Origin: Haliotis rufescens
Taxonomy: Eukaryota
Length of the DNA: 64,000 nucleotides
NCBI RefSeq assembly: GCF_023055435.1
Contig: NW_025964361.1
Location: 31,062,001-31,126,000 of the forward strand
Reading direction: 5' to 3'
Translations under genes and position numbers: made by a program
The notes under the pieces: model-generated
Database searches by the model: none
Told to the model about the DNA's origin: nothing
What the model saw: only the letters and a program-made list of their open reading frames with translations
Shown here: piece by piece, positions 809 through 48,043 of the stretch
How the letters are laid out: every line of letters starts with the position of its first letter
Position numbering within the stretch: the stretch's first letter is position 1

Positions 809-3090
809 TCCCCATATCATGAGTGTACTCTCATACCGTAGCCTCACAATCTGGTTGCCACTACCAGCACGCAGGTGTGAACCCTCTGGTAGTGAACAAA
901 CAAGAATGCCATCTTGCGTTGTCAGTGTAACATTAGGCAAGACGGAGTTACCTCTCTTATACCACTCACGTCATGTTGTCTTCAGGAAGCGTTGCAATTC
1001 AATGAAGTAATGTTCAAATAATGTACTCACGGCATAATTCTGAAACATAAGAAATGTTCAATATTTATTTTTCTCTAAATAAATTATTTGAGTTTATTAA
1101 ATAACGATGTATGATATGTGTTTAACAAATTAATTACACTCCAGCAACATAAGCATTCCATTCCATTGTGGTTGCATCCGCGAACATAACATCCCTTTTC
1201 GCGAACACCTGGTCTCATCACTATTTGATAGTGATTCATAAACACATGTACATGGTATGGTCGGAATCGTACAACGAACTCGTTATTTTTATGAATATGG
1301 AAAGCGCTTTATAGCTTATATTTAAACATAAACTAAAATTAAAGGAAACATCGTTAGATTGTGAATAAGTTTTAAAACGTGGCTACAGGAAACTGAATTC
1401 AGGTTGATAACGATTGTCTATGCACACCAAAATCATCTTACTGTAAGAAGTCAGTACATTTTGAGAAAACAATTGTCTCTGAAAATATATTTGATTGATA
1501 GAAACAAGGGATTCCATTCAAAATAATTTCATACTTTTAAGTTAACACTGTTTCTTTCATGCTGATTGGCTGAATGGGTAGTCACGTGACTAGCTCAGAG
1601 GTTCACACAGTTTAACCAGCGCTTTTAAAATCGTTCACACTTCAATGAACCCATCCAAACTGACGTTCAATTCTTAATTGAAAAGGAGCCCCAATGATGT
1701 GGGAAATTTAGGGAAATCTAGGCTTGCATCATTTGACGCTTTGGCATTACAGAAGGGGCTGGGCAAAATAATATAAGGGAAATAATATGACACAGGGACT
1801 GTGAGGCAGGTTAAACAACAACGTACAGGAACTTTAACGTGCGCTATTGGAGGAGTGGGACCGCATACCCAATGATGTCATTAGGTGGCTTACGTCATCG
1901 ATGAGGCGACATGTCCTAGGCTTCCCGAGGAGTTCACGCTCAATAATGATGTCATTACCAACGCTCTATGAAAGTGTTCAGATGTTTGTTATCACACTTT
2001 CTGTGAAAGGTTACAGTAATGACAACAGGTGTATTTGATGTTAATTCATCACAGGGCTATTAGTGCCATGGAATTGTCGTTTGGCTCGTTGTATAAATAG
2101 TGATGAAACTTCAAAATGCATTCAAATAAAATGTGTACATTTCGTCGTTTGCTTTTTATAAGCAGTCCATGTCAATGTATACTTTCTTGTGATCAGTAGT
2201 GTATTTGAGACTAGGTACAGTTCGGGACGAAGTACGTGTGATGCCACTTACTGGTTAGGTCTGGTTGAGTGAAGCTAAAGGTAGTTTTCCCCAAAGTAGT
2301 AGCTGTATCTGGTCTCTGATTGGCCACACAGTCCCCCGGGTTCTGAGACAGCTGTATAGTGTCGCCCTCCTTCTGTAAAGCCTGTAGGAACAAAACGAGT
2401 TTCTCACATACTTAGGGGCGGTCGGGTAGCCTAGTGGTTAAAGCGTTCGCTCGTCACGCCAAAGACCCGTGTTCGATTCCCGACATGCGTACAATGTGTG
2501 AAGCCCATTTCTGGTGTCCCCAGCCGTGATATTGCTGGAATATTGCGGCGTAAAACCATACTCACTCGCTCACTCACTCACTCACTTACATACGTATTGT
2601 ATGTGTCAAGTGCTGAAGAACGTAATGCATGGTAAGTGTAGTCATAACAAATCTATTCAAATCATGTTATCACTTATATGTTATCTTGAGAGAGAGAGTG
2701 ACAGTGGTTTAACGCCGCTTTCAACAGAATTCCGGTCGTGTCAACTTAATGTGGGAGGAAAGCCCGAAGAGATAATGAAACCCAGGAGCCCCGGCATGAT
2801 ACTGAGAAACCCAGAAATTTCATCAGGGTGAACGGGATTTGAACTCATGACCCCCTGTTTCTGGCACGCTCTGTGACACAACTCTGCACAGCGAATCTTG
2901 GCGCCTTTGACGCCTGCTCCTATATCAAGAGATGATTGAACGATCCTCATCATAATGTTATATCTGTTACAGATCAGAAACAAAGTGTAAAATGACTGAA
3001 TTATTTTGATGTTTATTTCATCGCCCAGTTACTTAAAAGGATAGCATCAAAAGAAAAAGAAAGACAACATATTTTATTTTTTTATAATTT

Positions 3091-3125
<35 letters not shown>

Positions 3126-3126
3126 T

Positions 3127-3157
<31 letters not shown>

Positions 3158-6100
3158 GGGGGGGGTCTAATCCTAGCATAGTTAGTCTATTGTGTTTTTG
3201 TAAGCCATATTGAACTTCTTAATGATATTTAGTCAGTCCGCCAACTAAATGGACCAAATGTTTTGTCATTTTGTAAAATGACTGAAATATTTAGGCATTT
3301 AATAAATTGCCTATTTGAATCACATTTTACAAATTTACTGTAACACCGGATATCAAGAGCAAATAACTTAACCATGGTTATAAGCAGTCCAAGACGTATT
3401 TGAGATTAGGTAAAGCTCGGGGTGAAGTACGTGTGATGCCAAATACGGGTTGTTAAATAGTTAAGTGTGGGCGTTTATACATATCAAGGTTAATTCTCCG
3501 CCTTCATATAGTTTAGGCCTCGCTGTATGATGGCTCATATTACAAAGAGCTGACGCAAGTGAAAACTATTGTAAATGGTTGAGAAGATATGTTACTACTC
3601 ACTATACATGTGTATCTGAATGTGTTTGTGTCGTTGACTTCGTTATCGTTGTTGTAGACGTGGAGGAAGGTGATGTTGCCGCTGCGAACCTCGTGCACAC
3701 AGATCACACTGCCGTTGGCTGGTGGAGACAAAATACATGTGCAACTTGGCTTGTGTTAGCTTGTGCAACAGTTAGTGGATGGTCCTTACCGCCGCATCAG
3801 CTGGGAAGCAGATGAGGCACCCTTGGTTCGATAAAGTATGTTATTGATGCCACCCTCCCTGATAATGCTAGAATATTGCTGTGTCTCCGAATATTCCCAC
3901 ATTCACTGCCTACTGTAGCATGACACCATCGTTTTGCCCTTGAATATTGACATAGATACCACATAAGGATGATGGTTTTCCAATCATCTGTTGAGATAAG
4001 AGCGGCATGGGTGGTGGCACGGTCATCTACACCGCCGGAATTCGTTGTGCTAAGTTGTATTAAGTAATGTGTCGAAAGCTATATATTACTTAGTATAATT
4101 TGCATTACGCACAACCATAAACTAAGTAATATATTCTTGATTCTGAGTAATGTATTCTTGGGAATCGAATGCAAATGTATCCCTAATGAATTCTCATTTT
4201 ACAACTATACAAGTACAGAGCACTGTATGCGCACAAGGAGCACAGACTGACTTGTGGTATCCAGTGCCCAATCAGGCAGATACAGAAACACGAAGTCATA
4301 CAACAACTTGCGCAAGCGGGCCTGTAGTTGATAGCAGGCGCAGCGGCCGGCAATATATTGACAGGGACGTGTTGGACCCTCGTGACGATCCAGTGACAGG
4401 GACCTGATGGACCCTCGTGACGATCCAGTGCCCTGGATCTGATGGACTCTCGTGACGATCCAGTGCCAGGAACCTGATGGACCCTCGTGATGATCCAGTG
4501 CCAGAGACCTGGTGGATCCTCGCGACGATCGAGTGCCAGGCACCTGATGGAATGCCTCATGACGATCCAGTGCCACCAACTGTCTTCACCAACTTATCCG
4601 ACTAACGGGATAGGGTGTCAGGCTCGGTGACTTGGTTCACTGGCAGAAATAGTTAGTCTACTTACTTACTCAGTGAATTTCACAGTCCAGTCCAGTCAGA
4701 TAAAACAAATACTTGTCAGGAGATTTTACAAACCAGTATTTACTTATTAGACTGGAATAGGTGACCTGTCGACGACTGGTACAATTTACTAATCAGTTAG
4801 TAGAGATTACTATCAATCTTTCGAAGAAACTCATAATTTACTAACTGCAATAGTATATTTGCAAGCTTGAAGTATGTTTTGCTGCACTTTAATAAAAGCT
4901 CATTTCTTGGTCATTTTGCGATAATTCCTGTTGACAACTGCTGAAAACAATTTGCAAAAAAACCCAAGTAAATAACATAAACAATACAGGGGAAAGATCG
5001 CATATGATGCTTTCCAGTGCCAGTTTAAATTTACTTACACAGTACTACGAAATACTAATTGACAGGTAAATACAATTAAAAATATATTGTTTTATACTGG
5101 CAAACTTAACAAACCCCCCTTCTTCATTTGGTACTTGCTAAAAAAAACCATTGCATTAATTAACAACGTTAAAAGGCTAATATCTACCTAACACTCGAAC
5201 TCATAATTATCTACTTTTTGTCTCAAAATGGCGAGCCTGACACGAACCAAGGCGGAAGTGAGGATTGTCACGTGGTCTTGACGCCGAAAATGAACTAAAA
5301 CACATATGTGACGTCAATCTCTCCATTCCTTAGAAATAATGGAGCCGCGGCCCTGAGTTACGAGGATGTTCCCTTAATTAAAACACATCCCTACTTTTGC
5401 ACTTTGATGAAACATTGTCTTGTGGAAAATATTTGAAAAATAAAACAGAACTCTTTGCAGTCTGTATGTATACTGTATGAGTCGCCCTTGTGTGATGCAC
5501 GAGGAATACGTTCTCGGTAGCTGTTGCACGTGTACCCAGCTCCGTCGCGAGGTGACATTTACTATGCATGGTACACGGCTCTTCATTATTTCGTGGGGCC
5601 CTAAAGAAGCATTTTATCAATCGCTTGCACGTTGTAAATACATGCTGACGGGGATTATAGGAAATATAGAGACCGGAACAAGGAGTTATATGTGTACCGG
5701 ATCTCGCCAAAGATTAATTAAATTGCTTTAAATACGAACTTTGTTATTGTTACCTACTGTAATACAAAATTATATACATATTATTTATTTACCTTTAAGG
5801 ATTATACGGGGGCCTCGCGTCTATTGTTTTTTTTAGGAATGGAGAGCAATCTTGCAGACAGGATAGGAAATTTGTTGTTTTCGAACCTTCTGGCCGCCAT
5901 CACATAGCTGGATTATTGCTGAGTGGGCCGTTAAGCAAGAAACAAACAAAACACTTTGCTGGTCAGGACATGCCGTTCCACTCACCACTGAACAAGGGCA
6001 GGATAGTGCAGGAGGAGGTGTTGTCCATCTGGATGTATGAGTTGTCCACACAGGCGTCCAAGGAGGCGGGACAAGAGGGGTCCTGGGTGTTGTACACGCC

Positions 6101-9100
6101 GAGCAGCTCCGTGGGGCACGTCCGAGGCCACGACGAGTGGTTACCTGGTTAACAAGGAATAGGAAAATATAGCCATATATAATTTTCTTGAGTCACCTCT
6201 ACGGAGAGATTTATAAGGAATATATTTATTTAGATTGGTTATTTCATGTGTTTGTTGGTGGTATATCACGGAATACACATGTAGAATAATAAATAGAAAA
6301 CTAGCTAGAATATTACGTTTACGACAAGTGTATGTTAATAGGGAACATAAACAGCAAAGCGATAGAAAGTTGACACTTGAAAATTGTATTTGACTGTGCT
6401 GAAAACATTCTCCGAAACACTGCAAACTTTAGGTCCACATTGAGACCATGCAGGAAGAACATTACTGATGTTCTCACGGTTCTAATGCTGATAACCTCAA
6501 TGCACTGCCACATTCAACCCTTCACAATAGCCAGTTATCATTAGTGATGGATGTAGGGCAGCTGCGGCTGCTTTGTCCAATCATCCGTCATCATATCAGA
6601 TCGTAAATAAAACCGGTACTGGTTTTGGAAAACAAGATGGTGACCGGACGAACACCCCACCGGTTAATGTTTTCGATCTGGAATCCTTATAACCCACAGA
6701 GATCATTACCAGACTTTTCTAACGGGACGATCCCTAACCCCGATCAGCAACATACAGACAAGACTCGTTAGACGATGCATGGTTGAGGGGGTACGGTCAT
6801 CGCAGCTTGGGGTGGGGTTGTTTGTTTGTTGTTTAACGCCACACTCAGCAATAGTCCAGCTGTATGACGGCGAGTTGAATGATGCTCTTTGTTGAAGTCC
6901 CATGCTCGACTGTACCTCAAAAGTTGTGAAATGTAGAAACCAAAGGCTGTAGCCGCTGGAATATTGCTCGGCAAATAGGGAATGTTGACTTTAGGGAAGT
7001 TGAAATGATCCCTCTTGTCATACGGTTTGTGGTAAGAATTTGTCATTCTGTATGCATAGATCTAAATATATTTTGTTTGCTTGTTTGTTTTTTAACGCCG
7101 CACTATATGACTGTGGACTGTAACTATTCGAGTCTGGACCAGACAATGCAATGACTGACATCATGAGCATCGATTCACGCAATTGGGATACGATGATATG
7201 CATCAACCAAGTCGGCGAGCCTAACCGCCGGATCCCGTTAAACGCCTCTTTCGACAAGCATAGTCGCCTGTTAGGGCAAGCATGGGTTGCTGAAGACCTA
7301 CTCTACCCCGAATCTTCACGGGTCGCTTTGGGTGGGGTTGTTACTGACTTGTTTTCAGGAAGACGCTGTACATAGTGGTGAGGTAGGAGGACTCTGGGAT
7401 GTCACAGATACGGGACACAGGATCCGAACCCACTTCAGACAGCTTGAGAAACTTAACGTCATACGGTTTCGTTCCGGGGCCTGCACAAAAACGTGAAATG
7501 TCAATGTTCATATTCGCATATCTATCTTCGACTGGAGTGAACAAGAAAAATGAAAAAGATACAATTCAAGCCAAAAATGAGGCAACTTATGGCGGTCGAA
7601 ACAGTACGTGTTTCTTCACATTCTCGTTGTTTTCTTTAAAGCCATCACACACTGACACAAACCTCACAGACAGTGTAACATCATTATAGCCATTGACGTA
7701 TCTGAGTTAGCATTGTCGTTAAAGTGTTCACTCGTCACGACAAAGACCCAGAAAACTGTCACTCAAAGCGATCTAAGTGTTGCGATTGTCTTAAGTCAAG
7801 GTGAAAATAGATAAGATTCACCGCTTTGGAAAATGGGTCTCGGGTCATATTCCCCAATGCGTTGACATACAGAAAGATACCGAGTCGCTAAAGGTATTGC
7901 CTATTCGCCTAAAATGTTGACATAAATGTTGACTCCATGTCGTTCAATGTGTTGTTAAAAAAATCACTCAATATTACCACATGCCAAATACATGCTTTTT
8001 GAGCAAATAATGTTTATCTACATTTGTACTCTTGGAGAATAATTTATGACGTTCGAGGAATTAATGATCATATTATATTACTCTGCGTAAATTACGTTTG
8101 AATAATAACCCCTCAAAGTGACTATAGTGGCTTTGACGACACAATTTCAGTTTATGATCATGCATCCAGAATGAAAGGTGAGTTAATACAAGGACATACG
8201 ACCCCGGAATGAGATACTAGTGTATGTGTAACTCCCACCTGTTTTGGTAGCTTGGACAAAGGTAGCCTTGATGTCGGACACTACAGTCAGGTCCATACAC
8301 AGGAAGATGTAGCGGAACTCAGCCTCACTTGGCAGCTTGTCACCGAGGACGGAGCTGCAAACACGAACCTTCATCAAGCCGTGTCAACAGACAATTTAAC
8401 ATTGGGACGCCACTCTCATGATGTTGTCGGGAAAAGCGGTTTATCATTATGCTTTTCAGAATTCATTTACTTATACACTCTCAATTATAAATAAAACCAT
8501 GACCTGGAAAAGTAATTCAATTTTGGTTGCATGTAACATGTGGACGCTGCATTTTGAACCACTTAAAACCAAAGGTAGGCTTAAGATAATCAACATGAAT
8601 TATTGAAAGATTGCACAGACTTAATTTCACCAAGTGCGATTTTGAGACAAATAAATCTGTTTTCGACGTTCCAATAATGTTTATAAAACCTGCTATCTGA
8701 GACGTAGACGATGTTATGCATGAAATAGTACACGCGTACTGATGTTCATCATCATCTTCGCAATAACGTTATTTGTTCTTTGTGTTCCGACAATTGTCCA
8801 AATAAACAAAAAATTTCATTAAATATATTTTTGTTAATTGTCCTTACCGGATGACATATTTAGATCCATTATTTGCTAAGCAGTCATATTGTTTGCCAAT
8901 ATCTCCCTCCAGCAGTGGCGCGTCGATAAGACCCAGTCCGTCGATGTGCGACACGTTCACGTTAACAACGGAGTTGTATTTGGACAGCATGTAGGACCCT
9001 TGGAAAGTACTCGGAAACTCACAGAGGCTCTGTGTTCCTGGAGGACAGTAACGCTTAGCATGTACTTATGTTAGATTCATACTGGTAGTAAACGTGTTAT

Positions 9101-9738
9101 GTACTTTATAACGAAAAGATGATGCATTTACTCGCTATTATAAGGCTTATGTGAAACCCTGCCGTCCGCCAATCAGGCATCATTAAAAATAAAATGCAGG
9201 GCAAAAGAAAGTATACATCCATGTTTGATAGGGGCTAAAAATAAAACAAAAAATGGTTACTCGATTGTGATGTATGTGATATAGATATTATAGTTATGTT
9301 TTGGACTTCAAGTTTGCAGTGTTTCGACGACACTTTCAGCAAATCAACGTTTTGATATCCATTTTTTACGTGTATACGTGTCTTTCCGGCAGTTTATATA
9401 CTAGTAACATATTGGTACACACATTTGGGGCTTACAGTTTCAAAACATTTAAGTGTAGTCACGTATGATACGTGTAAATAAAGTGCCCTCATTATTTCAT
9501 ATGTAAATTGAGACCAGCATAATCTCATCGATATGTTTCTCACAAAACAAAAAGAAATCCGTTTCATTCATGAAAACTTGTCTCAGTTGGATGTTACGTG
9601 CATCTCATTACTTAAAAGCAAATGTTTCTTATTTCATTTTCTGTTCATGTGAATTCTGTTATTCCTTAAAATAACTGATCACTCACCTGCAACTTCGAGC
9701 AGAATTAGGAGTAAACTCCAACTAAAGTCAATCTTCAT
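809..9738 (-). CDS. Gene A: secreted or cell-surface Cys-rich two-domain protein, paralog of B and C; 3' end probably outside the window
   Basis: Exons (minus): 9738-9687 MKIDFSWSLLLILLEVAG (signal peptide); 9037-8848 TQSLCEFPSTFQGSY...YDCLANNGSKYVIR; 8354-8239 SVLGDK...YIFLCMDL...ATFVQATKTG; 7480-7349 PGTKPYDVKF...RICD...YSVFLKT; 6144-5986 NHSSWPRTCPTELLGVY...CPASLDAC...; 3718-3603 NGSVICVHEV...FRYTCI; 2381-2252 ALQKEGDTIQLSQNPGDCVANQ...; microexon 1039-1031; tentative 885-809 GSHLRAGSGNQIVRLRYESTLMIWG. All introns GT-AG, phases 1,2,1,1,1,0,1,1, 327 codons with no stop. The last exon is less certain. Confidence 0.88.
1031..1039 (-). CDS. 9-nt microexon of gene A (K-L-C)
   Basis: catttcttatgtttcag|AATTATGCC|gtgagt; phase 1-1; homologous position to the B and C microexons. 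Confidence 0.8.
1165..1310 (+). mobile_element. Penelope-like element 3' UTR fragment
   Basis: Similar to 60180-60340, which follows an RT remnant (acctgg..tcatcact..gatagtgattcataaacacatg..tcggaatcgtacaac). Confidence 0.65.
1800..2203 (+). mobile_element. Tc1-like transposon 3' remnant
   Basis: LEEWDRIPNDVIRWLTSSMRR resembles the Tc1 transposase C-terminus; ends in TIR-like tgtatactttcttgtgatcagtagtgTA related to the ~235-bp MITE ends. Confidence 0.65.
2415..2586 (+). mobile_element. tRNA-derived SINE family S1 (GTC anticodon remnant), (ACTC)n tail
   Basis: A-box tagcctagtgg, B-box gttcgattcc, body tacaatgtgtgaagcccatttctggtgtccc, shared tail. Confidence 0.9.
2697..2917 (-). mobile_element. 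SINE family S3 (tRNA-Leu-like head), degenerate
   Basis: Matches 32903-33183. Confidence 0.8.
4360..4575. repeat. 35-bp minisatellite, ~6 copies
   Basis: Unit ggaccctcgtgacgatccagtgccagggacctgat; period 35 (4374, 4409, ...). Confidence 0.9.
6823..7324 (-). mobile_element. Composite retroposed insert: full S4 + Penelope-like RT fragment + second S4 tail
   Basis: Flanked by an 18-bp direct repeat, 6805-6822 and 7325-7342 (17/18 identical); middle translates YDKRDHFNFPKVNIPYLPSNIPAATAFGFYISQLLRYSRA. Confidence 0.8.
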
Positions 9739-11669
9739 AATTAACGTTCAGTTCTCCGCCATTGTAGTCATACACCTGTAGCTATTAAAAGATGACTCCT
9801 TTCAGCGAATGTTTAAGTGTCATATACCGTCACCTTGCGACCTCATAGTCATGAAAAAGAAGAACTTCTCGCCTTTATGGTGTCTCACTTACACAGTGAA
9901 GGTGGCATAGGCTGTATACAACCAGAGATTGACGCCTCGGCCATCAGAGAAAGCTTTGTCGTGAATGTTAAGCCACGAATGAATACGTCTTTCATGGAGC
10001 AATGGCGATAGAAGTAGAGATCTCTGGAGGTAAACAATAAGTCAGTGTGTGACTGTCGCCATTGAGCATTTGTATATGGAGTGTCCGCTTCTCGGTGTTG
10101 AGAGTAATCCTGTTGTGATCTGGCATATATGTACACATAAATATCGGTTGCTTCTTCAGAACCTGCGTCGATCTTATATATGTGTGTATTAAAGAATATT
10201 GCCTAACGTATGTTGCCGTGATGTTTATCTTGATAAATACATTCAGATTTCATGTTGGGGTTGAATGAATGTTTGAAGCTAATTAAACACATGACAAACG
10301 CTGAGTTCAATTTTGATTCAACTGTAAAAGAACTTAGATAATTAAAGCGTACATGTATTATTTTCAAACGGGTGCTATCGTTTATCATCATTATTTCATA
10401 CTGTGAGGATATAATTTCTGGTGCTGGAAACATGCATGATGGTATATCCTGTGAAAAGGGCATTAATCGGAATTATCACGTTTGTACATGTGATACACCA
10501 TAATGGTTTCAACCTATCTGATGAATAGAAAAATTCACTTCACAATCGTTTGGACATGGGATAAACTGCTTTCTCCGTTGCTGAGGTGTTGTTGCGTATA
10601 TCCATAAAGAAATAAAAAGGTTGAAATTGGTTGGTGTTCGTTGGTTGGTTTGTTGTTTAACGCCACACTCAGCAATATTCCAGCTATATGACGGCGGACC
10701 AAACAATCCAGCGATCGGCATTATCCACGCAAGTTGGATAACTCCATAGCCAAGCCGTACAATGTTACAATAATGTGGTTGATAATTGTTTAACGGTACA
10801 TCAGCTATCTTACGGCAACACATGTATCATATGTAGTCGTGTACATATCAGTACAATACAACACCAAACGTCAATAACCGAGGTATATGTAAACATGTGA
10901 GGTATAATGTTTATTCATATCCATAAATAAGGAACAAGAAACACGTAAAAAGGGTTTCCTTCATGTGAGTATCCTCTGACATCAGTGTGACAAAAGGTTT
11001 TCACCATCGGCGTTATCTGTATCTGTTAATTACATTTACACTGTTGATATTCACTGTCACAAAAACTGTAATAATTAAAGTGGCAAAAGCATGTGTTTGC
11101 TCGTGGTAACTTTTATGATGTATTTATATCACTGCTGAAAATATACACCAATGTTTGGTGGTGGCTAAAAAATGAAACAAATGAGAAATGGTTATTCGAT
11201 GGTGATGTATTTTATATGGGTATCCTCGGCGATATTACATGCATCACATCAATGCGTATCTCACAACAGGTCAGCCTTATAACGCTTATGTAACGTCTGT
11301 AATGTTTGGTCAAAACCAATTTTCAAGTGTAAGCATTCTTTTGCCCGGCATTGTATATACCTCCAAGAGTGTATATTTTGTTCTTTTGTGACTTCATGAA
11401 TTAGGAACAGACTGCTATGATACTAATGATACTATAATGTGCTTTGAGCCAATAAAATTCGAATACAAAGTGAACTCACATACACTTAAAAATACCTTTG
11501 TAAGAACAGTAACTATCGATCCAATAATGATGCGCATATTATTTTCTTTCTGCTTTTAATTGTCTATCTATTGACTATCGTATAATTGTATATATTTAGA
11601 CATGAAACCATCAAGTGCTAGACTTCTTATTCTAGATAATCATGGATTATCGATATGTATTAAAACGAT

Positions 11670-14590: not shown

Positions 14591-14719
14591 GTCGAAGTAT
14601 TGTAACATATACGTTCAGTAGAAAGTCATCTGCATTACAGACTGCTGCTTGTTTGTTGCTTCAATGGGCACGTCGTCACTGTCTACGGCTTTTCACAATG
14701 ATGTCGATGGGCCGACGTA

Positions 14720-32880: not shown

Positions 32881-32902
32881 TTCGGGGCGTGATGTAACAG
32901 TG

Positions 32903-37050: not shown

Positions 37051-37056
37051 TTTATT
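37051..37056 (-). terminator. Putative polyadenylation signal of gene C
   Basis: AATAAA on the minus strand ~520 nt after the stop codon. Confidence 0.45.
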
Positions 37057-37576: not shown

Positions 37577-40500
37577 CTACTCTGACTTCTTCTTGTCTTT
37601 CTTCTTCTTCTTTTTCTTCTTCTTCGACTTCTCTACGTTTTCCTCTTGTGGTGCTTTAGAAGTGTCTTCCGGGCTTGATTTGACTGAGCTGTCCGTGGTT
37701 CCTTGTTTCACTGCGCCAGCCTGTTCAGCTTTAACGAGACTTCCTGATGATGCCCCAGCAGGCGTAGTAACAGCAGCAGTAGTTACAGCTGTAGGTTCAG
37801 CTTTAGGAGCGGCGGTGGTAGCAGCTGTTGGTGCAGGTGTAGGGGGAGCAGTAGTAGTAGCAGCTGTGGGCGCAGGTGTAGGGGTAGCAGCTGTAGATGC
37901 AGGTGTAGTGGTAGCAGTAGTAGCAGGTGTAGACGCAGCTGTATTAGGAGCAGGAGTAGTAGCAGCAGCCGAGGGAGCGGTAGGAGGAGCAGTTGCAGCA
38001 GTTGTAGTAGTAGCGGAAGCCGATGGTGTACTTGAAGAAGCAGCTATCGGGGTGCTTGAGGCAGTAACTGGTGTCGTAGAAGCAGGTTTCGCTGTTGCTG
38101 CAGCTGTGGCAGTGGCAGTTGCAGCTGCGGCTGCTGGGATTGCATCAGGCGGTGGGCGTGATGTGGGTTCACTTGGTTTACTCTCAGGTTTAGGGTTATC
38201 CTGGACTTTACTGGGTGACTCCTTTGGCTTTTCTGGTGACTTGTCTGAACTTTTCTCTCCCTTCTTTGCCGCCGTGGATGTTTCGTTGACAGTTGTAACC
38301 ACTGCTGGTGCTACAATCGTGACATGTTTAACATGGCCATTGGTCGGTGTTTTACCGTTGGCAGTTGAGGTTTTGGAAGGATGTGTGGATTTCTTCCCAT
38401 CTGAAAAATAAATGTAAACTTTTGATTGTATCTGTACACAAGTTATGTAAATTTCATTTAGAACTTAAAATATGCAAGCGTTACACACGTCTCGCTCCTA
38501 AAACTGACAGTAGGGGTGTAACGAAAGCTCAAATTTAAACAACGACGCAGTGAGACTGTCCATGGTCCTATTACGTGAAGCAGATAAATCATGGGGACCG
38601 TCGTCGACGATCACGGTTTCGTTATATTTATCAAATTAAATCCTCAAATTACTTATAACCAACGTTGTATGCAATTCTTATTAAGATACATATTGATATC
38701 TATTCAAAACAATGGCAGCTGCATACAAAGCTACCTTCTTTAACTCTCTTACACGTTCCCTGAACCTAGACGCATTGGGTTTCACCTGATATGAAAAAAA
38801 TGATACTGTTCAGAAGGGCGTAAATCCCCATGCTGACACTCACTGACTCATTCACTGACTGACTCACTCACTCACTCACTCACAGGGAGCCACGAAATCA
38901 GCGCACCTGAGAGGTGAAGGTGAATATGATAGAGTATTAGTCCAATGCCCCCGATCGAATGCAACTGGAAGGGACATGGGTTGCGCGGTTGTCTAAGGCC
39001 TAGTTATTCGCTGTGCAGAGTCTATTGCGCGTGGAAGAACCCTATAACAGTGGGTTCAAATCCCAGATTCACCATGATGAGTGTTTCTAGGTTTGTCAGT
39101 ATCGTATCCGTGCTCGAGGGTTTCACCAAAGATACAAAACTTATAAATTCTGCATCATTTCGGCTGACACGTCGTGATGGAGTGAGTGAGTCGGGTTTAA
39201 CGCCGCTTTTAACAGTATTCCAGTTATATTACGGCGTGTCAGATTAATGTGGGAAGAGCCCAAAGTGATGCAGGTCTGAGACGTTTACGCCGTGATGTAT
39301 CTGAAGTACTATCATAAATGGCGTTAAACCAAATTTACGCACTTATCACTCAAACCAATTGTTTTTTAACTATATGTATATTACACTATCAATACGATAT
39401 TTATCAAGCAGAGAACATAACGGCCAGCATGCAGTTTAGAATTTGAAATGACATACCGTCTTGAACTGTATTCAATTTCTTGTTGCGCTTCTTCATTAAA
39501 AAGACAATGACAATAACAGCAATGGCTATCAGGATGAGGATACCAACAGCGGCTCCACCTGCGATGGCCCCGATGCCATCCTCCTCTTCATCTGAAGTTA
39601 TCGCTGGCAACAATCGATTGTGAAGAAGACATAAGTAAACAAGCTGACAAGGAATAGAATGACATCATCTTTGAAAGTGATCTTAACAACAAATGTCGTA
39701 CATATTAAAGTTTATATAATATATAATTCAACAATATTAGTACAAAGCAATAAATGTTAATGTTATGATAACCAACGCAGTTTAGGTTACATGCTGTTTT
39801 ATGTCCATGCATGCCTGAGTTAACTTAGATGTATTAAGTAGTACTTACGACACAGTTCTGAAATAGATAAGGAAATATTTGTTAATATGGATTCCACGAT
39901 CGATTTCTGAAACATGTTTATACACAACAGAATGTTTTCTATTTACAATCACAAAGCGTTGTAAAAAAATGCAGATGCATGGATACTTTCACTGTGGATA
40001 AATGATATCTGCACGATAATATGTGTTATGTTGTGTTCTAGTATCACCTTATACTCAAGTCACACTCAGGGATAGGTGAGCGTGGGGGGCACATACATGA
40101 CAATATTCTTTAATCTGTTAATTGTTATCAACATGTAATTAATATTACAATTTATCATCCGCACTCATCTATATGACGACGGTCTGCAAATAATGTCATT
40201 GACAACATGAGAAAAGATCCACACAAGCGGGATACGATCGCGATGACAATGTCGTTTGTTGTTTAACACCGGAGTCAGCAATATTCCAGCTATGTCACGG
40301 CGGCCTTCGAACCATATAGTGTAATCACAAGAGTAATTCCATCACTATCGAACGAACTGTGAATATGAGAGTCTTGACCAGTCACAAAGATGATTTGTAT
40401 TATGAGCATTACCCACGTCGTCTATGTACGATGACACGCAAGTCACCAAGACTGATCACCCGATCTACGTCGCCGTCTCCCACGGCAAGCAAAGGTTGCT

Positions 40501-43500
40501 GGGGATCTTTATTCGGCATCCCCACAGATACATTGTAAATATAAACAATGTACACGACAATTATTGTGTGAACTGGTATGAATACAATGTCTTGATTTGC
40601 ATAGACATATGCCCGTTCCTTACCCAATCAGAAGCTGGTATTTTAATGTTAAATATTCATTATAAATCAAACTTAAGAAACGTATAACATACCTAAAGGT
40701 ACCATTGAAAGCAAACCGCCTGGAGAGACACTTGATGCGACTTGATTAGCGAAACAGTCCTGAGGAGTGTACGAGGCTGACACCGTACCCCCGTTGTCTT
40801 CAAGTGCCTACATACAGAAAATAGTTATTGCTTCTTCATATGGTGAGTCTTGGTCTGTCGGCAACATATCCAGTTTATGGATTTCACTTAATTGGTAAAC
40901 GTTAACGACCTGTTTAACTGTGGACTTCCTCCCCCATCAGGCTGCCAAGCCGACATATGATGGAAATACTGTTGAAATGGCATCACAATTAACTCACCAG
41001 CTACAACGACCAACTCGCACAACAGATCACACCAGAAGACCTTCAATGAGTTGTCTTTCACACAACGATCACATACATTTCATGAGGTATAACATTTGTG
41101 TTAACAATATGGTGTGTTTCATCCCATACACAACACCAGTTGTAATTATCTTGGTCATCTTATCTTTGAAAATATATTTTCTTTAAATTCGGCAAAAATT
41201 TACAACATTAGTTTTCAAGTATGGTAAGGGGGTCATGTGGTTGCAAATTCATTTCTTACCCCAGTCTTCATTGAACCCAGCCACAAATTAGTTTTTACAA
41301 TCGGTTGCAGGAATGAGTGTTGGATAAATAGGCACAATCGAATCTAACTTTAGTTCTTTCAATTTTCAATTACACAAAATTCTTTCTTTTGACCCTCAGT
41401 TTATGTCAGATCCCACAAATACAACAATTACTGTGGAAGAATGGGTGTGTCACACGAGGTTCTACATACAAAACACACTGTCCTGATGGTGGTGGAGGAG
41501 AAGGTTCCTGTTCCGATCCAGGTCCACAGGTAGGTATTAGCTCCTCGTGTCACAGCGCCCATACACTCCAGGTTTCCGCTAGCTGAAGTAGTACAATGTA
41601 GCATGCTTCAGTTTGTGTTATGGGGGGTCCAGGGTTTCACACTATTTCTTTGAGTCCAAATCCGAAATATTACATTGTTAGCTAGCACTGTGCGGATATG
41701 TCACTCGTCAAACTGAAAAGCACTATTCTAAATGCTCGTATCATCCAAACATGAAATCCTAAGGGGAACGTTCCGCCTCGGCATGTTGCATGCGGTTACA
41801 GAAGGGACATTTAGCTGCCTCACATAATATGGACCAGGGTCTTGGACACGTACGTATACGCTTTCGTTCATGTATCGACGAATATTTAATGTGTAATTCC
41901 ACATAGGTTAAACTCTGCATGTAGTTTGCACAACATGGTTTGCGTTATTCATATGTCAGACTTGCTTGATATTTCGATTGTCCATGGGTCAGACTTACTT
42001 GACACATTGTTTGTCCATCCGTCATACTTTCTTGGCACTTCGTTTGTCCATCTCATACACTTACTTGACATTTTGTTCGCCCATCTGTCAGACTTACCTA
42101 ACAATTAGTTTGTCCATCTGTTAGACGTACCTAACATTTAGTTTTTCCTTCTATCACACTTATTTGACACATTGTTGACCCATCTGAAACACTTTCTTGA
42201 CACTTAGTAAAGCCATCTATCAGACTTACCTAACACTTAGTTTGTCCTTCTATTACACTTACTTGACACATTGTTGACCCATCTGTCAGACTTACCTAAC
42301 AGTTAGTTTGTCCATCTGTCAGATTTACCTAACATTAAGTTTGTCCATCTCTCAGACTTACTTGACACATTGTTGACCAATCTGTCAGACTTACCTAACA
42401 TTTAGTTTGTCCATCTGTCAGACCTACTTGACATTTAGTTTGTCCATCTGTCACACTTACTCGAGTATGCCACCTGATCCGCACATTGGACGTAGTCAAT
42501 GGCGATGTTAGTTCTCCCCGGACAGACAGCGAAACTAGAGTTGCCCGTACACTTCGTCCCATCGAAGGTGTAGTTGTAGTTGCCGTGGATGATACTGGGG
42601 CACGCCACGGCCATCTCCCCCGCGGTGTCGCCTTTGCCTGTCCAAGGATGTCAGATAAAAACTTTGATAATGGTATGTTGAGTTTAAATATATAATCATG
42701 ATGCTTGATAATGTAATCAAGTGCAGAGGTATAAGTCATTCCACTGATTGTAGACAGCGAAGCTGACGATAGTTTTCTTTTCTCTGAAATGATGAGTTAA
42801 ACATGTTTTGGGCTCACGTGTCATATTTTTTTCAGAACTTCCAGCATGCCCAGATATCGTTTTACTTCGCCACCTACACCTGGTGTCATAATTGATTTTC
42901 TGTGATCCATTGATATTATTTTGATCACTATTTTGTTTTCACTTCCAGCCTCTTTATGATGTTGTAAATGTGTGCCGAAAAAGGCAATTTTTCTTTGTCA
43001 AAGGTAAGATGTTTAGTAAGATACTCATCACCAATTGTGTGATGAATCTTTTAAATGTTTAAATGTTTTAAGTCAAATTATATTCTTTAAAAACGTCGTA
43101 TTCCTTGTGTGCTGACTAAGCGCCGCACAGTTCATTTTTGTAGATTTAATATCTCTAATTAAAGATAGTTTCAAATAATATTAAATCAAACAATTTAAGA
43201 TACAATCACCATAGAGGTAGCGTTTCTTTCGCTCCTCAGTTTATATTGGGGAAAAAATATATTTTTCTTCAGAATACCAAATGGTCAGCGACTTCTTCAT
43301 TATAAACTGCCAGGCACAAGAAAGTATACACTCATATTGCATGGTGGTTAAAATGACAAAATTGAAAAAAAATATTGGTTATTCGATGGTGATGTGTTTG
43401 ATGCAGGTATCACAGTTGTGTTTTGGATCTTACGTTTGCATTTTTTCGGTTACTCTTTTCAGCCAAGTGACGTTTTAATAATGATTGTAATTTTGGTCAA

Positions 43501-46500
43501 ATTCAATTTTCAAGTGTACACTTTCTTTTGTCCGGCGGTTTACATGACCTGACATCAGCCTTAACATATACAGGGCAATCTCTTGAAGTATATCATCATA
43601 TGTTTACAGTGTAAGTCAATATGCCTGTATGGGTGAATGTGTTACAGGTCATGATGCCATGATGGGATGTTGTCCTTCAAAGGGAGTAAAGGTGATACTG
43701 ACACAGCATAACGTCTATACAGAACAAAACCAGTTAACCAGCGATCTTGCTTGTGTCTACCCACCGCTTCTGTACATGATATTCGATCTGATCTCCGACG
43801 GTTGAAAGGCACACACGTCAAGTGATGTAAGCGTCGGGTTGATATCCACGAAGCCTTTCACAAGTGTCAGATCAACATCGCTTACCGAGATCTTTGAGCT
43901 GACATCTGCAAAGGAAATATCTAATGTCAACGAACAGGTTAATGTGTGGTGCAAATGAGAAGTACATCCAAGGAAAATAACACGTTTGTGAAACATCATC
44001 ACAATTTCCGCGCTAAAGAACCACAGGTACGAAACTCCACTTGTTATTTAAACAAAGCGACAAAGTCATTTCCATAATCGTAAGAAATCTCTGCTGAAAG
44101 CAGAGTCCATAGTACTATTCGCACTGTACCATGAGCATGAATACATTATGGATCACCATGAACTATTGATGATACCAGGTGTTCGCGAAAAGGCGATCCT
44201 GTCATTTTCCTTGGAAAACACGAATACATGCAAATGTCAGTCAATATTTTATTTGAAAAATAGTCAAAAGAGGTGATTACATTGTCTGTTTCCCTATGGA
44301 AAAGCATATACTTACTTGCTAGGTCTGTCATTAAGAAACTATTGGCGCCGAAGACTTCAATAGCGAGGCATAGATAGACGAACTGGTTATCCACGGTGTA
44401 GGCTCTCGGGAGATCCTGGCTAGACAGGGAGCATACATGCATCAGAAATAACCAACATAGTAGATGAACAACGTGTAGTATGTAGTAATTAAGACGACTG
44501 CGATACACAGAGGTTTGTTGGGAACTAGCAAACATACCAATAGGTTTCACTAATGTTACATATCAGTTTCTTAATCTCATTAAAACAACAGCATGTATTA
44601 TATAGATATCACACGTGTCTGTGAGGGCAACATGGAAATGGAAATCACACATGTCTATGAGGTCAACATGGAGATGTGAATCTCACGTGTCTATGAAGGC
44701 AATATGGAGATGTAAATCTCACGTGTCTATGAAGGCAACATGGAGATGGAAATCACACATGTCTGTGAGGTCATGATCAACATGGAGATGTAAATCGCAC
44801 GTATCTATGACGGCAAATTGGGGATGTAAATCACACGTGTCTATGAAGGTAACATGGAAATGTGCAAATCACACGTGTCTGTGAAGGCAACATGGAGATG
44901 TACGTAACACGTGTCTATGACGGCAACATGGACATGTACGCCCACGGTTCTGTTGATGGCAACATAGAGATATAAATCACATTTGTCTATGAAGGCAAAA
45001 TGGAGATATATATCACACGTGTCTATGAAGGAACATGGAGATGTAAATTACACGTGTCTATGAAGGCAACACGGAGATGTAAATCACACGTGTCTATGAA
45101 GCCAACAAGGAAATGGAAATCACATGTGTCTATGAAGGCAACATGGAGATGTAAATCACACGTGTCTATGAAAGCAATATGGAGATGTAAATCACACAAT
45201 TCTATGAAGGCAACATGGAGATGTAAATCACACGTGTCTATGAAAGCAATATGGAGATGTAAATCACACAATTCTATGAAGGCAACATGGAGATGTAAAT
45301 CACAAGTGTCTATGAAGGCAACAAGGAAATGTAAATCACACGTGTCTATGAAGGCAATATGGAGATGTAAATCGCACGTGTCTATGAAGGCAACATTGAG
45401 ATGGAAATCACACGTGTCTATGAGGTCATGATCAACATGGAGATGTAAATCACAAGTGTCTATGAAGGCAACAAGGAAATGTAAATCACACGTGTCTATG
45501 AAGGAAACATGGAGATGTAAATCACACGTCGTTATGAAGGCCACATTGAGATGCATCATTGAGAAAGTATGTTACTGCTATACAGACATACCAAGGTAAA
45601 ATTAAGTGGTCATACCAAACTGTAGGGACAAGATAGCTCCCAAAGGTAGAGAGATATGTAGTCTACCCAAGTCACATTGGGGCGACTCAATGAAGTAAAT
45701 AATAAACTGAAATGCTTGCAATACAGAGACGTTGCATGGGTACCTATGATGCATGTATTAAAACTATGTCTGAATAAGTAGGTGATATTGTCAGTACTTA
45801 CACAATAACATATGTGGCTCCATTTATCTCCTGGCATCTGAAATCATTGTAAAATTGTGTGCCGCTGTAATAGTTGAACCCTTGAAACGAACTGGACGAA
45901 ATTGTAAACGACTTGCCATCCCTTTCTCGTATCCAGGTGCCCCAGATGGAACTGGGGAAATTGCACTGGCTATCTGAAAAGTGTGAATAAAACTAATTAA
46001 CACACGGTATCTTTTGTCAGAGTCGAAAAGGCTCCATCCGATTTTGTTCTTGTGATAAACTGAAATCCTTTAAAAACACAGCATTTGTTTGTTTTTTAGT
46101 GTTGCCATGGAATGTTTATTATTGGTTCAGGAAATAAAGTGTTAAGGAGTATTGGACAATGTTCTAAACTTATATCTGTGAGTGTTACGAGTCTCAACAT
46201 CACAGCTGGAGCCAATGTATCTGGGTTTCTGTGTACCCAATCTNNNNNNNNNNNNNNNNNNNNNNNNNNNNNNNNNNNNNNNNNNNNNNNNNNNNNNNNN
46301 NNNNNNNNNNNNNNNNNNNNNNNNNNNNNNNNNNNNNNNNNNNNNNNNNNNNNNNNNNNNNNNNNNNNNNNNNNNNNNNNNNNNNNNNNNNNNNNNNNNN
46401 NNNNNNNNNNNNNNNNNNNNNNNNNNNNNNNNNNNNNNNNNNNNNNNNNNNNNNNNNNNNNNNNNNNNNNNNNNNNNNNNTGTGTATGTGTCCTCATACG

Positions 46501-48043
46501 TTCCGAGGATGAAAATGACCACGGTGGTAGTTGCATCTGACAATAAATTATGCAATATATTTAATGAGACAACACAAACACAGTATCTCAAGCGACATGA
46601 TGGAGTGGCTCGATCCTTTTATTACTGTCTTCGCAATGCTTGTGGTTTGACACAGAGGTCCACCTATAGTACGACCAGGAATATGTAGAGGGCGTCATGG
46701 AAAATATAGTTATAAAATCCTTTTGAATAGGCCCGTATACAGCCTCAGACCTATTCAGACCAACAAACCTGATCTTGTCCTGTTTGATAAATGCAATGAA
46801 ATCATTTATATCATTGAATCTTCTGTTCTTTTGACACTAATGTGATTAACAAGATTCAGGAAAAGCATGGCAAATATGCAGATCTCGCTTTCGAAATGTC
46901 ACGCTTGCATCCGAAGTAGTTGTCCGACTCCCCATTGTTCTCGGTGCCTTAGGTATGGTACCCCCTTAATCTGTTGACTGACATTGGGGGAGAACCCGGG
47001 TTTGTTGACAGGAATACAGCCCTTCTCACAATCTGGGTAATACAGAAGGCTGCAGTGTTGGTGAGTCTTCACATTCTCCGAAAAGTTGTAGATGGTTTCG
47101 ACTAGGCAGCGCTTCCTGGGAGAAGTCCAATTCGCTGTCTGGGCAGCGTGTAGAGGGGCCAAGGGTCCGGAGCTGATGATGACTCAAACCAGCCTGACTG
47201 TGCCAGGATCACCCCAACCCTCTTTGTTGCATTTACGTATTTATATCAGTAAACAATAATAATAATAACAAAAAGACAAAACATTTCCATAATCATAGTA
47301 AATCAGAGCGACAAAACCTTTTCCAAAGCTACAAGACATCTTTACTGAAAGCAGAGTCCATTATACGATTCCGAACATATCATGAGCATGTGTTTATACA
47401 TCACTGTCAAATGAAACTAGATGTTCGCGAACAGTTGAGAGTATCCTGCCCCGACCGTGCCACCGGTCACAAAGAACACATTTTGATTATATTAATGTGA
47501 ATGTCAGATAAGTACAATATGTATTTAATACTAAAATAAGTAATGAAAATATTTTTAGGACAGACAATGTACTGCAAAGCATTCTATTAAAATGTCATTA
47601 AAGATTGTTTATAAAATTTTATGTAGGAATATAAAATCGATCTCCCTCGAGTGAGACAACATGTTGTGTATAACTACTTCCAGTCTGCCGGAATCAGACT
47701 ACACTTTTCAGAAAAAGGCCGTGAGCATCCTAAAAAAGCATATTAAAAACATTCATTTTATTTTGTGACCTACAATGTCTATCATGAAAATATTATCTTT
47801 GTCAGGTCAGTTGGAGAGACAAGCAGATTAATCAACAAGAAAATACAAATATGCCCTGTATATTGCCTTTCACAGCAACGTTTACTGATCCATAACGGCA
47901 TGAACAGAGGAATAGCTTGTATTAAATAGAAAAAAATAATTAAAAGCTCGAAAACGAACAACGTATCAAGTTAAATACACACCACAGCCTTGAATGGACA
48001 AGACCACGATAATTATCCATAGAGCCAGGGGAGGAATATCCAT
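37577..48043 (-). CDS. Gene C: type I single-pass membrane protein, 620 aa; Cys-rich two-domain ectodomain plus Ala/Thr/Pro-rich cytoplasmic tail with poly-Lys end
   Basis: Exons (minus): 48043-47983 MDIPPLALWIIIVVLSIQGC; 45973-45802 SQCNFPSSIWGTW...FRCQEINGATYVIV; 44419-44316 QDLPRAY...FVYLCLAI...; 43905-43765 VSSK...LDVCAFQ...IMYRSG; 42637-42461 ...VACPSIIHGNYNYTFDGTKC...QVAYS; 41582-41470 SGNLECMGAV...RTVCF; 40807-40693 ALEDNGGTVSASYTPQDCFANQ...; microexon 39857-39849; TM exon 39603-39457 (AIAGGAAVGILILIAIAVIVIVFLM-KKR); terminal 38400-37577. Total 1863 nt, same intron phases as A and B. Confidence 0.88.
38970..39350 (+). mobile_element. Old SINE S3 interrupted by an inverted S3 3' fragment (39181-39286)
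   Basis: Head and body on plus, inverted tail fragment, then the remaining tail cgccgtgat...ggcgttaaac. Confidence 0.75.
39849..39857 (-). CDS. 9-nt microexon of gene C (E-L-C)
   Basis: ccttatctatttcag|AACTGTGTC|gtaagt; phase 1-1. Confidence 0.85.
41950..42460. repeat. 33-bp minisatellite (~15 copies) built from the gene C exon 5 splice donor
   Basis: Unit tttgtccatctgtcagacttac(c/t)t(a/g)aca..; the array abuts the exon end at 42461. Confidence 0.9.
43307..43540. mobile_element. ~235-bp Tc1-type MITE; related copies near 9160-9395, 11125-11355, 34110-34315, 35935-36320, 63055-63280
   Basis: TIR actgccaggcacaagaaagtatacact / agtgtacactttcttttgtccggcggt; shared core tggttattcgatggtgatgt. Confidence 0.8.
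44608..45555. repeat. 36-bp minisatellite, ~26 copies, in gene C intron 2
   Basis: Unit atggagatgtaaatcacacgtgtctatgaaggcaac. Confidence 0.95.
46244..46480. other. Assembly gap (237 N)
   Basis: Run of n. Confidence 1.
46481..47268 (+). mobile_element. 3' end of an R4/Dong-like non-LTR retrotransposon (restriction-like endonuclease), degenerate
   Basis: Frameshifted motifs YLKRHDGVA, NKPDLVLFDK...IYIIE, EKHGKYADLAFEM, PIVLGALG, IQKAAVL...HILRKVV; ends in (TAA)n. Confidence 0.8.

What the first reader, a model, noticed from the sequence alone, without database searches (positions are those of the whole stretch)
809..48043. Three-gene cluster of uncharacterised cell-surface paralogs: one ectodomain, three unrelated C-termini
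Seen: A (minus), B (plus) and C (minus) have exon-for-exon homology and identical intron phases over the first 8 exons (CEFPSTFQGSY / CDFPIQGNW / CNFPSSIWGTW; ATFVQATKTG / ATFVQATITG; CPASL in both A and B; exon 3 is 116 nt in A and B, exon 5 is 177 nt in B and C), yet their sequences are strongly diverged, so the duplications are old. After the microexon they differ completely: no TM seen in A; TM plus ~680-aa charged tail in B; TM plus A/T/P tail in C. Inference: a receptor or adhesion family in which a common binding module is wired to different intracellular outputs, with A a possible decoy or GPI form. A and B are head-to-head (~6.5 kb between start codons) and may be co-regulated.
Basis: partly seen in the sequence, partly recalled or inferred. 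Interest (0 to 1): 0.88.

Follow-up and report, generated by a model that had tools for sequence, protein, structure and literature searches.

The report
Three paralogous abalone membrane-protein genes
Three neighbouring red-abalone genes are old copies of one uncharacterised single-pass membrane protein; two of them share a long charged tail also found in a clam and only the third has a different tail, so this is an ordinary but unstudied gene family.

Summary
The window is Haliotis rufescens. The three paralogs are real. Gene B is the annotated LOC124148097: 1041 aa in 24 GT-AG exons, with exons 2-5 joined in one spliced RNA contig. My models of A and C have the same intron phases over exons 1-9, including a 9-nt microexon that ends in Cys just before the membrane exon. 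Ectodomain identity is 34% for A-B, 26% for A-C and 23% for B-C.

The claim of three unrelated C-termini, with no TM in A, is wrong for A. Gene A runs off the left edge of the window. Its membrane exon lies 3.4 kb past the microexon. About 13 further exons, reaching 21 kb left of the window, encode a tail homologous to B's with the same phases where they could be scored. Only C differs: a single-exon tail of about 275 aa, rich in Ala/Thr/Pro and ending in poly-Lys.

The ectodomain is a distant, below-threshold relative of Pfam DUF7043/7044 plus DUF7042. A clam protein has the same microexon motif, membrane segment and tail motifs. The assembly gap sits in C's intron 1, and only the link from exon 1 to exon 2 crosses it; that link is untested. 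No function is known. A is not a decoy.

The parts
9687..9738 (-). Gene A exon 1: start codon and signal peptide, ends in phase 1
   Evidence: Best hydrophobic ATG..GT candidate with donor gtgagt; 6505 nt from the B start codon
8848..9037 (-). Gene A exon 2 (190 nt), start of domain D1 with the C-x-F-P..G motif
   Evidence: 35% identity to B exon 2, E 3.7e-11; splice sites; weak Pfam DUF7044/7043 match at 17 bits
8239..8354 (-). Gene A exon 3 (116 nt)
   Evidence: Same length and phase as B exon 3; shared 7-residue motif
7349..7480 (-). Gene A exon 4 (132 nt), end of D1
   Evidence: z 11.6 against B exon 4
5989..6144 (-). Gene A exon 5 (156 nt), start of domain D2
   Evidence: CPASL motif
3603..3718 (-). 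Gene A exon 6 (116 nt)
   Evidence: Phase-matched candidate with good splice sites and conserved Cys positions; weak similarity of its own
2252..2372 (-). Gene A exon 7 (121 nt), end of D2
   Evidence: z 6-8 against B and C
1031..1039 (-). Gene A 9-nt microexon (x-Leu-Cys). The gene then continues left of the window: TM exon at L005:7408-7647, last exon at C583:31040728-31040928
   Evidence: pattern, acceptor tttcag, donor gtgagt; continuation shown
16243..16312 (+). Gene B exon 1: start codon and signal peptide
   Evidence: Protein P0001 threads exactly onto the window
17032..19690 (+). Gene B exons 2-5: 17032-17209, 18136-18251, 18444-18572, 19514-19690
   Evidence: Threading of P0001. One 925-nt RNA contig lies on these four pieces back to back (record 17)
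20080..21597 (+). Gene B exons 6 and 7: 20080-20183 and 21480-21597
   Evidence: contig depth in these bins
21853..21861 (+). Gene B 9-nt microexon (Glu-Thr-Cys)
   Evidence: required for P0001 to thread
22454..22675 (+). Gene B transmembrane exon with basic stop-transfer and Arg/Glu-rich juxtamembrane stretch
   Evidence: A 2341-nt RNA contig covers 22454-22676 and runs about 2 kb further downstream (record 21). Hydropathy 3.8
23406..32290 (+). Gene B tail, exons 10-24, about 700 aa, charged; stop codon at 32288-32290
   Evidence: One search lists all exons, all GT-AG. Conserved motifs shared with A, H. asinina and Mactra
47986..48043 (-). Gene C exon 1 candidate (signal peptide); lies beyond the assembly gap
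   Evidence: Best signal-like ATG..GT candidate; the link to exon 2 is untested
46244..46480 (.). Assembly gap (237 N) inside C intron 1
   Evidence: not filled
45802..45973 (-). Gene C exon 2 (172 nt)
   Evidence: 33% identity to B exon 2, E 7.8e-9; weak Pfam DUF7044/7043 match
44316..44419 (-). Gene C exon 3 (104 nt)
   Evidence: donor gtaagt; fits the D1 consensus that includes P0003
43765..43905 (-). Gene C exon 4 (141 nt), the least certain exon
   Evidence: acceptor tttcctttgcag; the V-C..I-M-Y-R pattern fits the D1 alignment; no significant score of its own
42461..42637 (-). Gene C exon 5 (177 nt), start of D2
   Evidence: weak Pfam DUF7042 match
41470..41582 (-). Gene C exon 6 (113 nt)
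   Evidence: splice sites and Cys positions
40693..40807 (-). Gene C exon 7 (115 nt)
   Evidence: z 8.0 against A
39849..39857 (-). Gene C 9-nt microexon (x-Leu-Cys)
39457..39603 (-). Gene C transmembrane exon
   Evidence: hydropathy 3.4, followed by a Lys-rich stop-transfer
37577..38400 (-). Gene C tail exon: about 275 aa of Ala/Thr/Pro-rich low complexity ending in poly-Lys, plus the stop codon
   Evidence: no Pfam match; no similarity to the A/B tails

Best explanation
This is a cluster of three old paralogs of a mollusc-conserved type I membrane protein.

Each gene encodes a signal peptide and two Cys-rich domains of about 130-140 aa. D1 comes from exons 2-4 and D2 from exons 5-7. Both are distant relatives of Pfam DUF7043/7044 and DUF7042. 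A 3-residue microexon ending in Cys follows, then Pro, one membrane helix and a basic stop-transfer.

A and B then carry a charged tail of about 700 aa encoded by many small exons. AlphaFold gives no confident fold for B's tail, which fits disorder but does not show it. The tail holds short conserved motifs and a conserved C-terminal stretch of about 90 aa that AlphaFold models as helices at low confidence. C kept the ectodomain, microexon and membrane exon but ends in one unrelated low-complexity exon.

Shown: the gene structures, the homology, the expression and splicing of B, and conservation of the A/B design in another abalone and in a clam.

Inferred: the proteins sit in the plasma membrane with D1-D2 outside. 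The ectodomain binds a ligand, and the A/B tail recruits cytoplasmic partners through its conserved motifs. C would bind the same class of ligand without that output. Because a confident model of a canonical DUF7043 domain is a lipocalin-like beta-barrel, a small hydrophobic ligand is my preferred guess. That step is weak.
For: Identity of the locus: P0001 is LOC124148097 of Haliotis rufescens and threads on the window in 24 GT-AG exons with 3 mismatches.

Splicing of B: one RNA contig joins exons 2-5, and another covers the TM exon and runs into the tail.

A beyond the window: a TM exon with the same Arg-rich juxtamembrane stretch, and collinear tail exons in phase with B exons 9-15 and 18-19. 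Further collinear, stop-free matches to the H. asinina protein P0034 reach the C-terminus. The last exon is 61% identical to B's and is the only other copy in the genome.

Paralogy: z scores of 15-46, and intron positions that coincide in the alignment.

Family: sub-threshold Pfam matches to DUF7044/7043 on exon 2 and to DUF7042 on exon 5. The Atlas feature match is 0.92 to a mollusc DUF7042 cluster. Protein P0003 matches B exon 2 at E 2.8e-12 and carries DUF7042 at 2.8e-16. The Mactra protein P0035 scores 25.2 bits on DUF7042 and shares D2, the x-L-C-P motif, the TM with KRRKK and three tail motifs. Profile comparisons place D1 on both DUF7043 positions and D2 on the DUF7042 position of canonical proteins, with P of 5e-4 to 1e-3.

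Fold lead: residues 26-138 of the canonical model have pLDDT 85-95 and match lipocalins and mouse APCDD1 at Z 7.5-9.7.
Against: No RNA evidence was obtained for A or C; the single read-laying run went to B. Neither was found as an annotated H. rufescens protein in my searches, although those searches are word-limited.

The Pfam matches of A, B and C are below threshold, and full-length B gives none. One profile comparison was very weak, with P 0.011.

The AlphaFold model of B itself failed, with mean pLDDT 36. The barrel fold is therefore borrowed from a distant relative. Z values of 7-8 are in the range the tool calls common.

The function is pure inference.
Confidence: 0.75

Rival explanations
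1. One reading: one binding module wired to three unrelated outputs, with A a secreted or GPI-anchored decoy that lacks a membrane segment.
For: Inside the window no TM exon follows A's microexon. An open frame at 809-912 could be read as a further exon.
Against: The exon at 809-912 would leave phase 0, whereas the homologous TM exon needs phase 1. A TM exon and tail exons homologous to B's lie 3.4 to 21 kb further left on the same strand, in order and open. The Cys-Pro junction after the microexon is kept in A, B, C and Mactra when A is spliced to that exon.
Confidence: 0.05
2. C, and possibly A, is a decaying or silent duplicate. The intact-looking models would then be products of my phase-guided exon picking.
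For: There is no RNA evidence for A or C here. C exons 3, 4 and 6 lack significant similarity of their own. C's tail is low complexity and is also open on the opposite strand. No annotated protein was recovered for either gene.
Against: Ten C exons and at least 15 A exons join without a stop, through canonical splice sites with good polypyrimidine tracts. The Cys framework and the microexon are kept. A's tail has an annotated ortholog in H. asinina at 52-83% identity.
Confidence: 0.15
3. The ectodomain has nothing to do with DUF7042/7043/7044. The weak matches would reflect only a shared Cys-rich, beta-rich composition, making this a separate lineage-specific family.
For: All direct Pfam scores are below the cut-off. 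A genome-wide Pfam scan does not pick up the window. hhalign probabilities are only 4-36%.
Against: Independent weak signals agree on domain order and register. Bridging proteins P0003 and P0035 link B-type D1/D2 to DUF7042. The Atlas feature score is 0.92, and all ten best hits are in the same family group.
Confidence: 0.2

Closest known systems
Pfam DUF7043/DUF7044 + DUF7042 proteins, for example H. rufescens LOC124147718 (P0021) and Patella vulgata LOC126823851
   Same: Secreted-pathway proteins with Cys-rich domains of about 100-120 aa that open with a C-x-F-P..G-x-W type motif. The DUF7043/44-like domain comes first and the DUF7042-like domain second. They occur in molluscs and arthropods and have no known function.
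   Different: The canonical proteins are about 650 aa. In abalone they are single open frames, contain two such domain pairs separated by a ShK-like Cys knot, and end in a short hydrophobic C-terminus with no cytoplasmic tail. A, B and C have one pair, split over six exons, then a microexon, a true membrane helix and a long tail. They score below the Pfam cut-offs.
Mactra antiquata hypothetical protein ACF0H5_010606 (P0035), and the H. asinina proteins P0020 and P0034
   Same: The same design as A and B: D2, the x-L-C-P junction, a membrane helix followed by KRRKK, a charged tail with the same three motifs, and the conserved C-terminal block. P0020 is the ortholog of B (81-82% identity) and P0034 is the ortholog of A's tail.
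   Different: All are unnamed predictions. The Mactra model lacks D1 and a signal peptide. P0034 starts just after the membrane segment. P0020 lacks the microexon residues. All three look like annotation errors.
APCDD1 (vertebrate WNT inhibitor; structure in PMC10193966)
   Same: A type I membrane protein whose ectodomain is two tandem disulfide-stabilised lipocalin-like beta-barrels, one of which binds a lipid. The canonical DUF7043 model matches mouse APCDD1 at Z 7.5-7.6 over 105 residues.
   Different: There is no sequence relationship: no APCDDC Pfam match in B or in canonical relatives. The Z score is tied with ordinary lipocalins. APCDD1 has a short tail. The fold of B itself could not be modelled.

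Membership tests
Pfam DUF7042 / DUF7043 / DUF7044 | Score at or above the curated cut-off (27 bits) on the family model | tested here: not met
   Exon-level scores are 17-18 bits, E about 0.005. Full-length B gives no match at E<=0.01. The window is absent from the genome-wide scans. The clam relative P0035 reaches 25.2 bits.
Pfam DUF7042 / DUF7043 / DUF7044 | Domain order and register: a DUF7043/44-like domain followed by a DUF7042-like domain, each opening with a Cys-Pro or Cys-x-Phe-Pro motif | tested here: inconclusive
   hhalign puts D1 on both DUF7043 positions (P 5.5e-4 and 7.2e-4) and D2 on the DUF7042 position (P 9.8e-4). The whole-ectodomain comparison gives P 3.8e-4. A second comparison gives only P 0.011.
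Pfam DUF7042 / DUF7043 / DUF7044 | Linked to confirmed members through intermediate sequences | tested here: met
   P0003 matches B exon 2 at E 2.8e-12 in 1.8 billion proteins and carries DUF7042 at 2.8e-16. The Atlas score is 0.92 to a mollusc DUF7042 cluster.
A/B-type mollusc membrane proteins (LOC124148097-like; unnamed) | Microexon-encoded x-(L/T)-C followed by Pro, then a membrane helix and a basic stop-transfer | tested here: met
   Present in A, B and C and in Mactra P0035.
A/B-type mollusc membrane proteins (LOC124148097-like; unnamed) | Long charged tail with the conserved motifs and the C-terminal block | tested here: met
   Met by A and B. Not met by C, whose tail shows no similarity.
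APCDD1 (Pfam APCDDC) | Match to the APCDDC domain model | tested here: not met
   No APCDDC match in P0001, P0003, P0021 or the other canonical proteins.
APCDD1 (Pfam APCDDC) | Two tandem lipocalin-like barrels in the ectodomain | tested here: inconclusive
   The canonical DUF7043 domain model matches lipocalins and APCDD1 at Z 7.5-9.7. The model of B has pLDDT below 50 across the ectodomain.

The most novel reading that the evidence does not exclude
A and B define a mollusc-wide class of single-pass receptors. Two tandem lipocalin-like barrels would sense a hydrophobic or lipid-modified ligand, as in APCDD1, and would be coupled to a charged tail of about 700 aa, probably disordered, with a conserved C-terminal docking block. 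C would be a natural tail-swapped copy that competes for the same ligand without signalling.
Probability: 0.15. Interest if true: 0.55.

Novelty: new variant of a known kind. Interest (0 to 1): 0.3.

Why it matters
The report corrects a window-edge error: A is a full-length twin of B, not a decoy. It also gives exon-level models for three unannotated or poorly annotated abalone genes. It links a conserved mollusc membrane-protein design to the uncharacterised DUF7042-7044 domains, for which I found no paper. That design is two Cys-rich domains, a Cys microexon, a membrane helix and a long charged tail with conserved motifs. If the lipocalin-like fold and ligand binding hold, the family would be a tractable route to the function of those domains. 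As it stands, this is ordinary gene-family evolution by tandem duplication and replacement of a 3' end.

Tried and rejected
- The phmmer search with B exon 2 returned mostly bacterial repeat proteins (LRR, NHL, FG-GAP, Ig-like). I treat these as spurious multi-repeat matches. Only P0001 and P0003 are relatives.
- AlphaFold on B with a 4-row alignment gave mean pLDDT 36, with only the membrane helix confident. It was not used for fold search.
- Foldseek on the whole canonical model gave TM-scores of about 0.1, which is meaningless.
- An Atlas search with B's C-terminal 112 aa gave no usable hit.
- A PDB sequence search gave only membrane-helix matches.
- The alignment of single exon translations with the full proteins (A1) scattered the C exons. 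It was not used for folding.
- C exon 4 alternative: the read-through frame at 44157-44285 was rejected. It would leave a 30-nt intron after a strong gtaagt donor, and it fits the D1 consensus less well than 43765-43905.
- A exon at 809-912 was rejected because it breaks the phase needed by the TM exon.
- A's TM exon has two in-phase acceptors. I kept the one that preserves the Cys-Pro junction.
- No complex prediction was attempted.
- The joined spliced models of A and C were built only inside scripts from the window and locus files. They were never sent to a search, family, Atlas or folding tool, where only single exons by reference were used. There is therefore no whole-protein Pfam or structure result for A or C.
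Full report
**What the window is.** A phmmer search with the translation of one exon (window:17013-17210) found a 1041-aa protein, P0001, at 98% identity. Its sources name it 'uncharacterized protein LOC124148097 isoform X1 [Haliotis rufescens]'. The window is C583:31062001-31126000 of a 1.33-Gb assembly.

**Gene B.**
- P0001 threads onto the plus strand in 24 coding exons, all GT-AG, with three amino-acid mismatches.
- Exons 1-9 are 16243-16312, 17032-17209, 18136-18251, 18444-18572, 19514-19690, 20080-20183, 21480-21597, a 9-nt microexon at 21853-21861, and the transmembrane exon at 22454-22675. The last exon ends at 32290.
- I laid Logan contigs of four runs on 16700-22699. One 925-nt contig lies back to back on 17029-17209, 18136-18249, 18442-18570 and 19512-19689. 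That is a spliced transcript across exons 2-5.
- A 2341-nt contig covers 22454-22676, with about 2 kb continuing downstream.
- B is therefore expressed and spliced as modelled. It has a signal peptide, an ectodomain of about 280 aa, one strong membrane helix and a 697-aa tail with 21% K+R and 20% D+E.

**The observation.**
- I scanned A and C for AG..GT-bounded open segments with B's phases and scored them against B's exon peptides. This gave collinear models.
- A: 9687-9738, 8848-9037, 8239-8354, 7349-7480, 5989-6144, 3603-3718, 2252-2372, 1031-1039.
- C: 47986-48043, 45802-45973, 44316-44419, 43765-43905, 42461-42637, 41470-41582, 40693-40807, 39849-39857, 39457-39603, 37577-38400 (619 aa, no internal stop).
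- Phases are 0,1,2,1,1,1,0,1,1 in all three.
- All three have a 9-nt microexon with a strong acceptor and donor. It encodes x-(Leu/Thr)-Cys, followed by Pro from the next exon.
- Ectodomain identities are 34% (A-B), 26% (A-C) and 23% (B-C), with shuffle z scores of 46, 17 and 15.
- In a three-way alignment the A and B introns fall in the same columns (within two columns at intron 6). C's fall there at introns 1, 2, 5 and 6. The others are blurred by alignment ambiguity.
- Two caveats apply. The phase rule was used to pick the A and C exons. C exons 3, 4 and 6 have no significant similarity of their own.

- After A's microexon nothing inside the window gives a membrane segment. The open frame at 809-912 would leave the wrong phase.
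- I fetched 28 kb to the left (L004, L005, L006). A stop-free frame there holds a very hydrophobic helix followed by the same Arg/Lys and Glu/Arg-rich stretch as in B.
- With B's phases, this exon (window -2592..-2353, or L005:7408-7647) joins the microexon and keeps the Cys-Pro junction.
- Homologs of B exons 10-15, 18 and 19 follow in order and in phase.
- An H. asinina protein, P0034 (642 aa, found with B's tail at 33% identity), matches this flank collinearly at 52-83% identity. It has no stops, down to the C-terminus at window -21275.
- B's last exon has exactly one other copy in the genome, at C583:31040728-31040928, 61% identical.
- Gene A therefore spans about 31 kb and has the same design as B. 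'No TM in A', 'decoy or GPI form' and 'three unrelated C-termini' all come from the window edge.

**Gene C.** Its tail really is different. It is one exon of about 275 codons with 65% Ala/Thr/Pro/Ser, ending in a Lys run. It has no Pfam match and only low-complexity chance matches to the A/B tails. B and C are tail to tail. A and B are head to head.

**The assembly gap.** The 237 N at 46244-46480 lie 271 nt upstream of C exon 2, inside intron 1 of my model. No modelled exon is interrupted, so no reading frame crosses the gap. However, the only good signal-peptide exon for C (47986-48043) is on the far side.

**What the ectodomain is.**
- Single exons give weak Pfam matches: exon 2 of A and C to DUF7044/DUF7043, and exon 5 of C to DUF7042, at 17-18 bits against a cut-off of 27. 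Full-length B gives none.
- The Atlas feature search puts B's ectodomain at 0.92 next to a mollusc 'DUF7042 domain-containing protein' cluster. All further hits are DUF7042/7043/7044 clusters.
- P0003 repeats a D1-like unit that matches B exon 2 at E 2.8e-12, and it carries DUF7042 at 2.8e-16.
- The clam protein P0035 (Mactra antiquata) scores 25.2 bits on DUF7042. It aligns with B through D2, the x-L-C-P junction, the membrane helix with KRRKK and three tail motifs, including the C-terminal block.
- Canonical family members in the same genome are single open frames of 613-691 aa. They have two domain pairs, a ShK-like knot and a short hydrophobic C-terminus.
- Profile comparisons made in scripts place D1 on both DUF7043 positions and D2 on the DUF7042 position, with P of 5e-4 to 1e-3. 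The tool's own hhalign run was weaker, with P 0.011.
- D1 and D2 also resemble each other, with P 1.4e-4.
- I read this as distant membership of the superfamily, not as a scored member.

**Fold.**
- AlphaFold on B failed, with mean pLDDT 36.
- On a 15-row alignment of canonical proteins it gave mean pLDDT 70.6, with 85-95 over residues 26-138.
- That domain matches lipocalin-type barrels and mouse APCDD1 at Z 7.5-9.7 over about 100 residues. The tool warns that such values can reflect a common arrangement.
- APCDD1 is a type I membrane protein with two disulfide-linked lipocalin-like barrels, one of which binds a lipid (PMC10193966). It is a functional analogy, not a relative: no APCDDC match appears anywhere.

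**Mechanism, with its status.**
- Shown: the genes, the paralogy, B's expression, and conservation of the A/B design in two abalones and a clam.
- Inferred from topology rules: type I orientation, with D1-D2 outside.
- Inferred from conservation: the tail motifs and the C-terminal block are docking sites.
- Speculative: a hydrophobic ligand bound in a barrel, and C acting as a ligand-binding copy without the A/B output.

**Literature.** There are no hits for DUF7042, DUF7043, DUF7044 or the locus names.

**Verdict.** This is a real but ordinary tandem family.

Noticed in passing
window 17250-17500 and 22140-22400: Two intronic stretches of gene B collect thousands of RNA contigs at 90-99% identity, with summed depth of 3-5e5. 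They are a very abundant transcribed SINE-like repeat family. They account for most of the 'share of words' that ranked the sequencing runs.
   Followed up: partly
window 44608-45553 and 41950-42461: Two minisatellites lie in gene C introns. One has a 36-nt unit in 26 copies in intron 2. The other has a 33/99-nt unit and starts directly after exon 5.
   Followed up: no
window 52393-52662 (+), with open frames from 51859: A remnant of a mariner-type transposase (Pfam Transposase_1, E 4.9e-18), outside the finding.
   Followed up: no
P0020 and P0034 (H. asinina), P0035 (Mactra): The public models look faulty. P0020 lacks the microexon residues and has an Asp run instead. P0034 is only the tail of the gene A ortholog and starts just after the membrane helix. 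P0035 lacks D1 and a signal peptide.
   Followed up: partly
G000 C57:15875002-16118716, C57:8748872-8750386, C290:2102950-2104167: Canonical DUF7043/7042 genes of abalone are intronless open frames of 613-691 aa. Three closely similar copies, two with identical scores, sit within 250 kb on C57. This contrasts with the many-exon A/B/C genes.
   Followed up: partly
G000 C323:2407165-2407314 (-) and C583:29433094-29433258 (-): There is a weak match to C exon 2 (E 0.04), and a DUF7042 match 1.6 Mb from the window. These may be further family members.
   Followed up: no
window 30783-32290 and C583:31040725-31041514: The C-terminal part of about 90 aa of the A and B tails is nearly invariant between abalone and clam. 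It has no Pfam, PDB or Atlas match. I found no support for an ODAD4/TTC25 relationship.
   Followed up: partly
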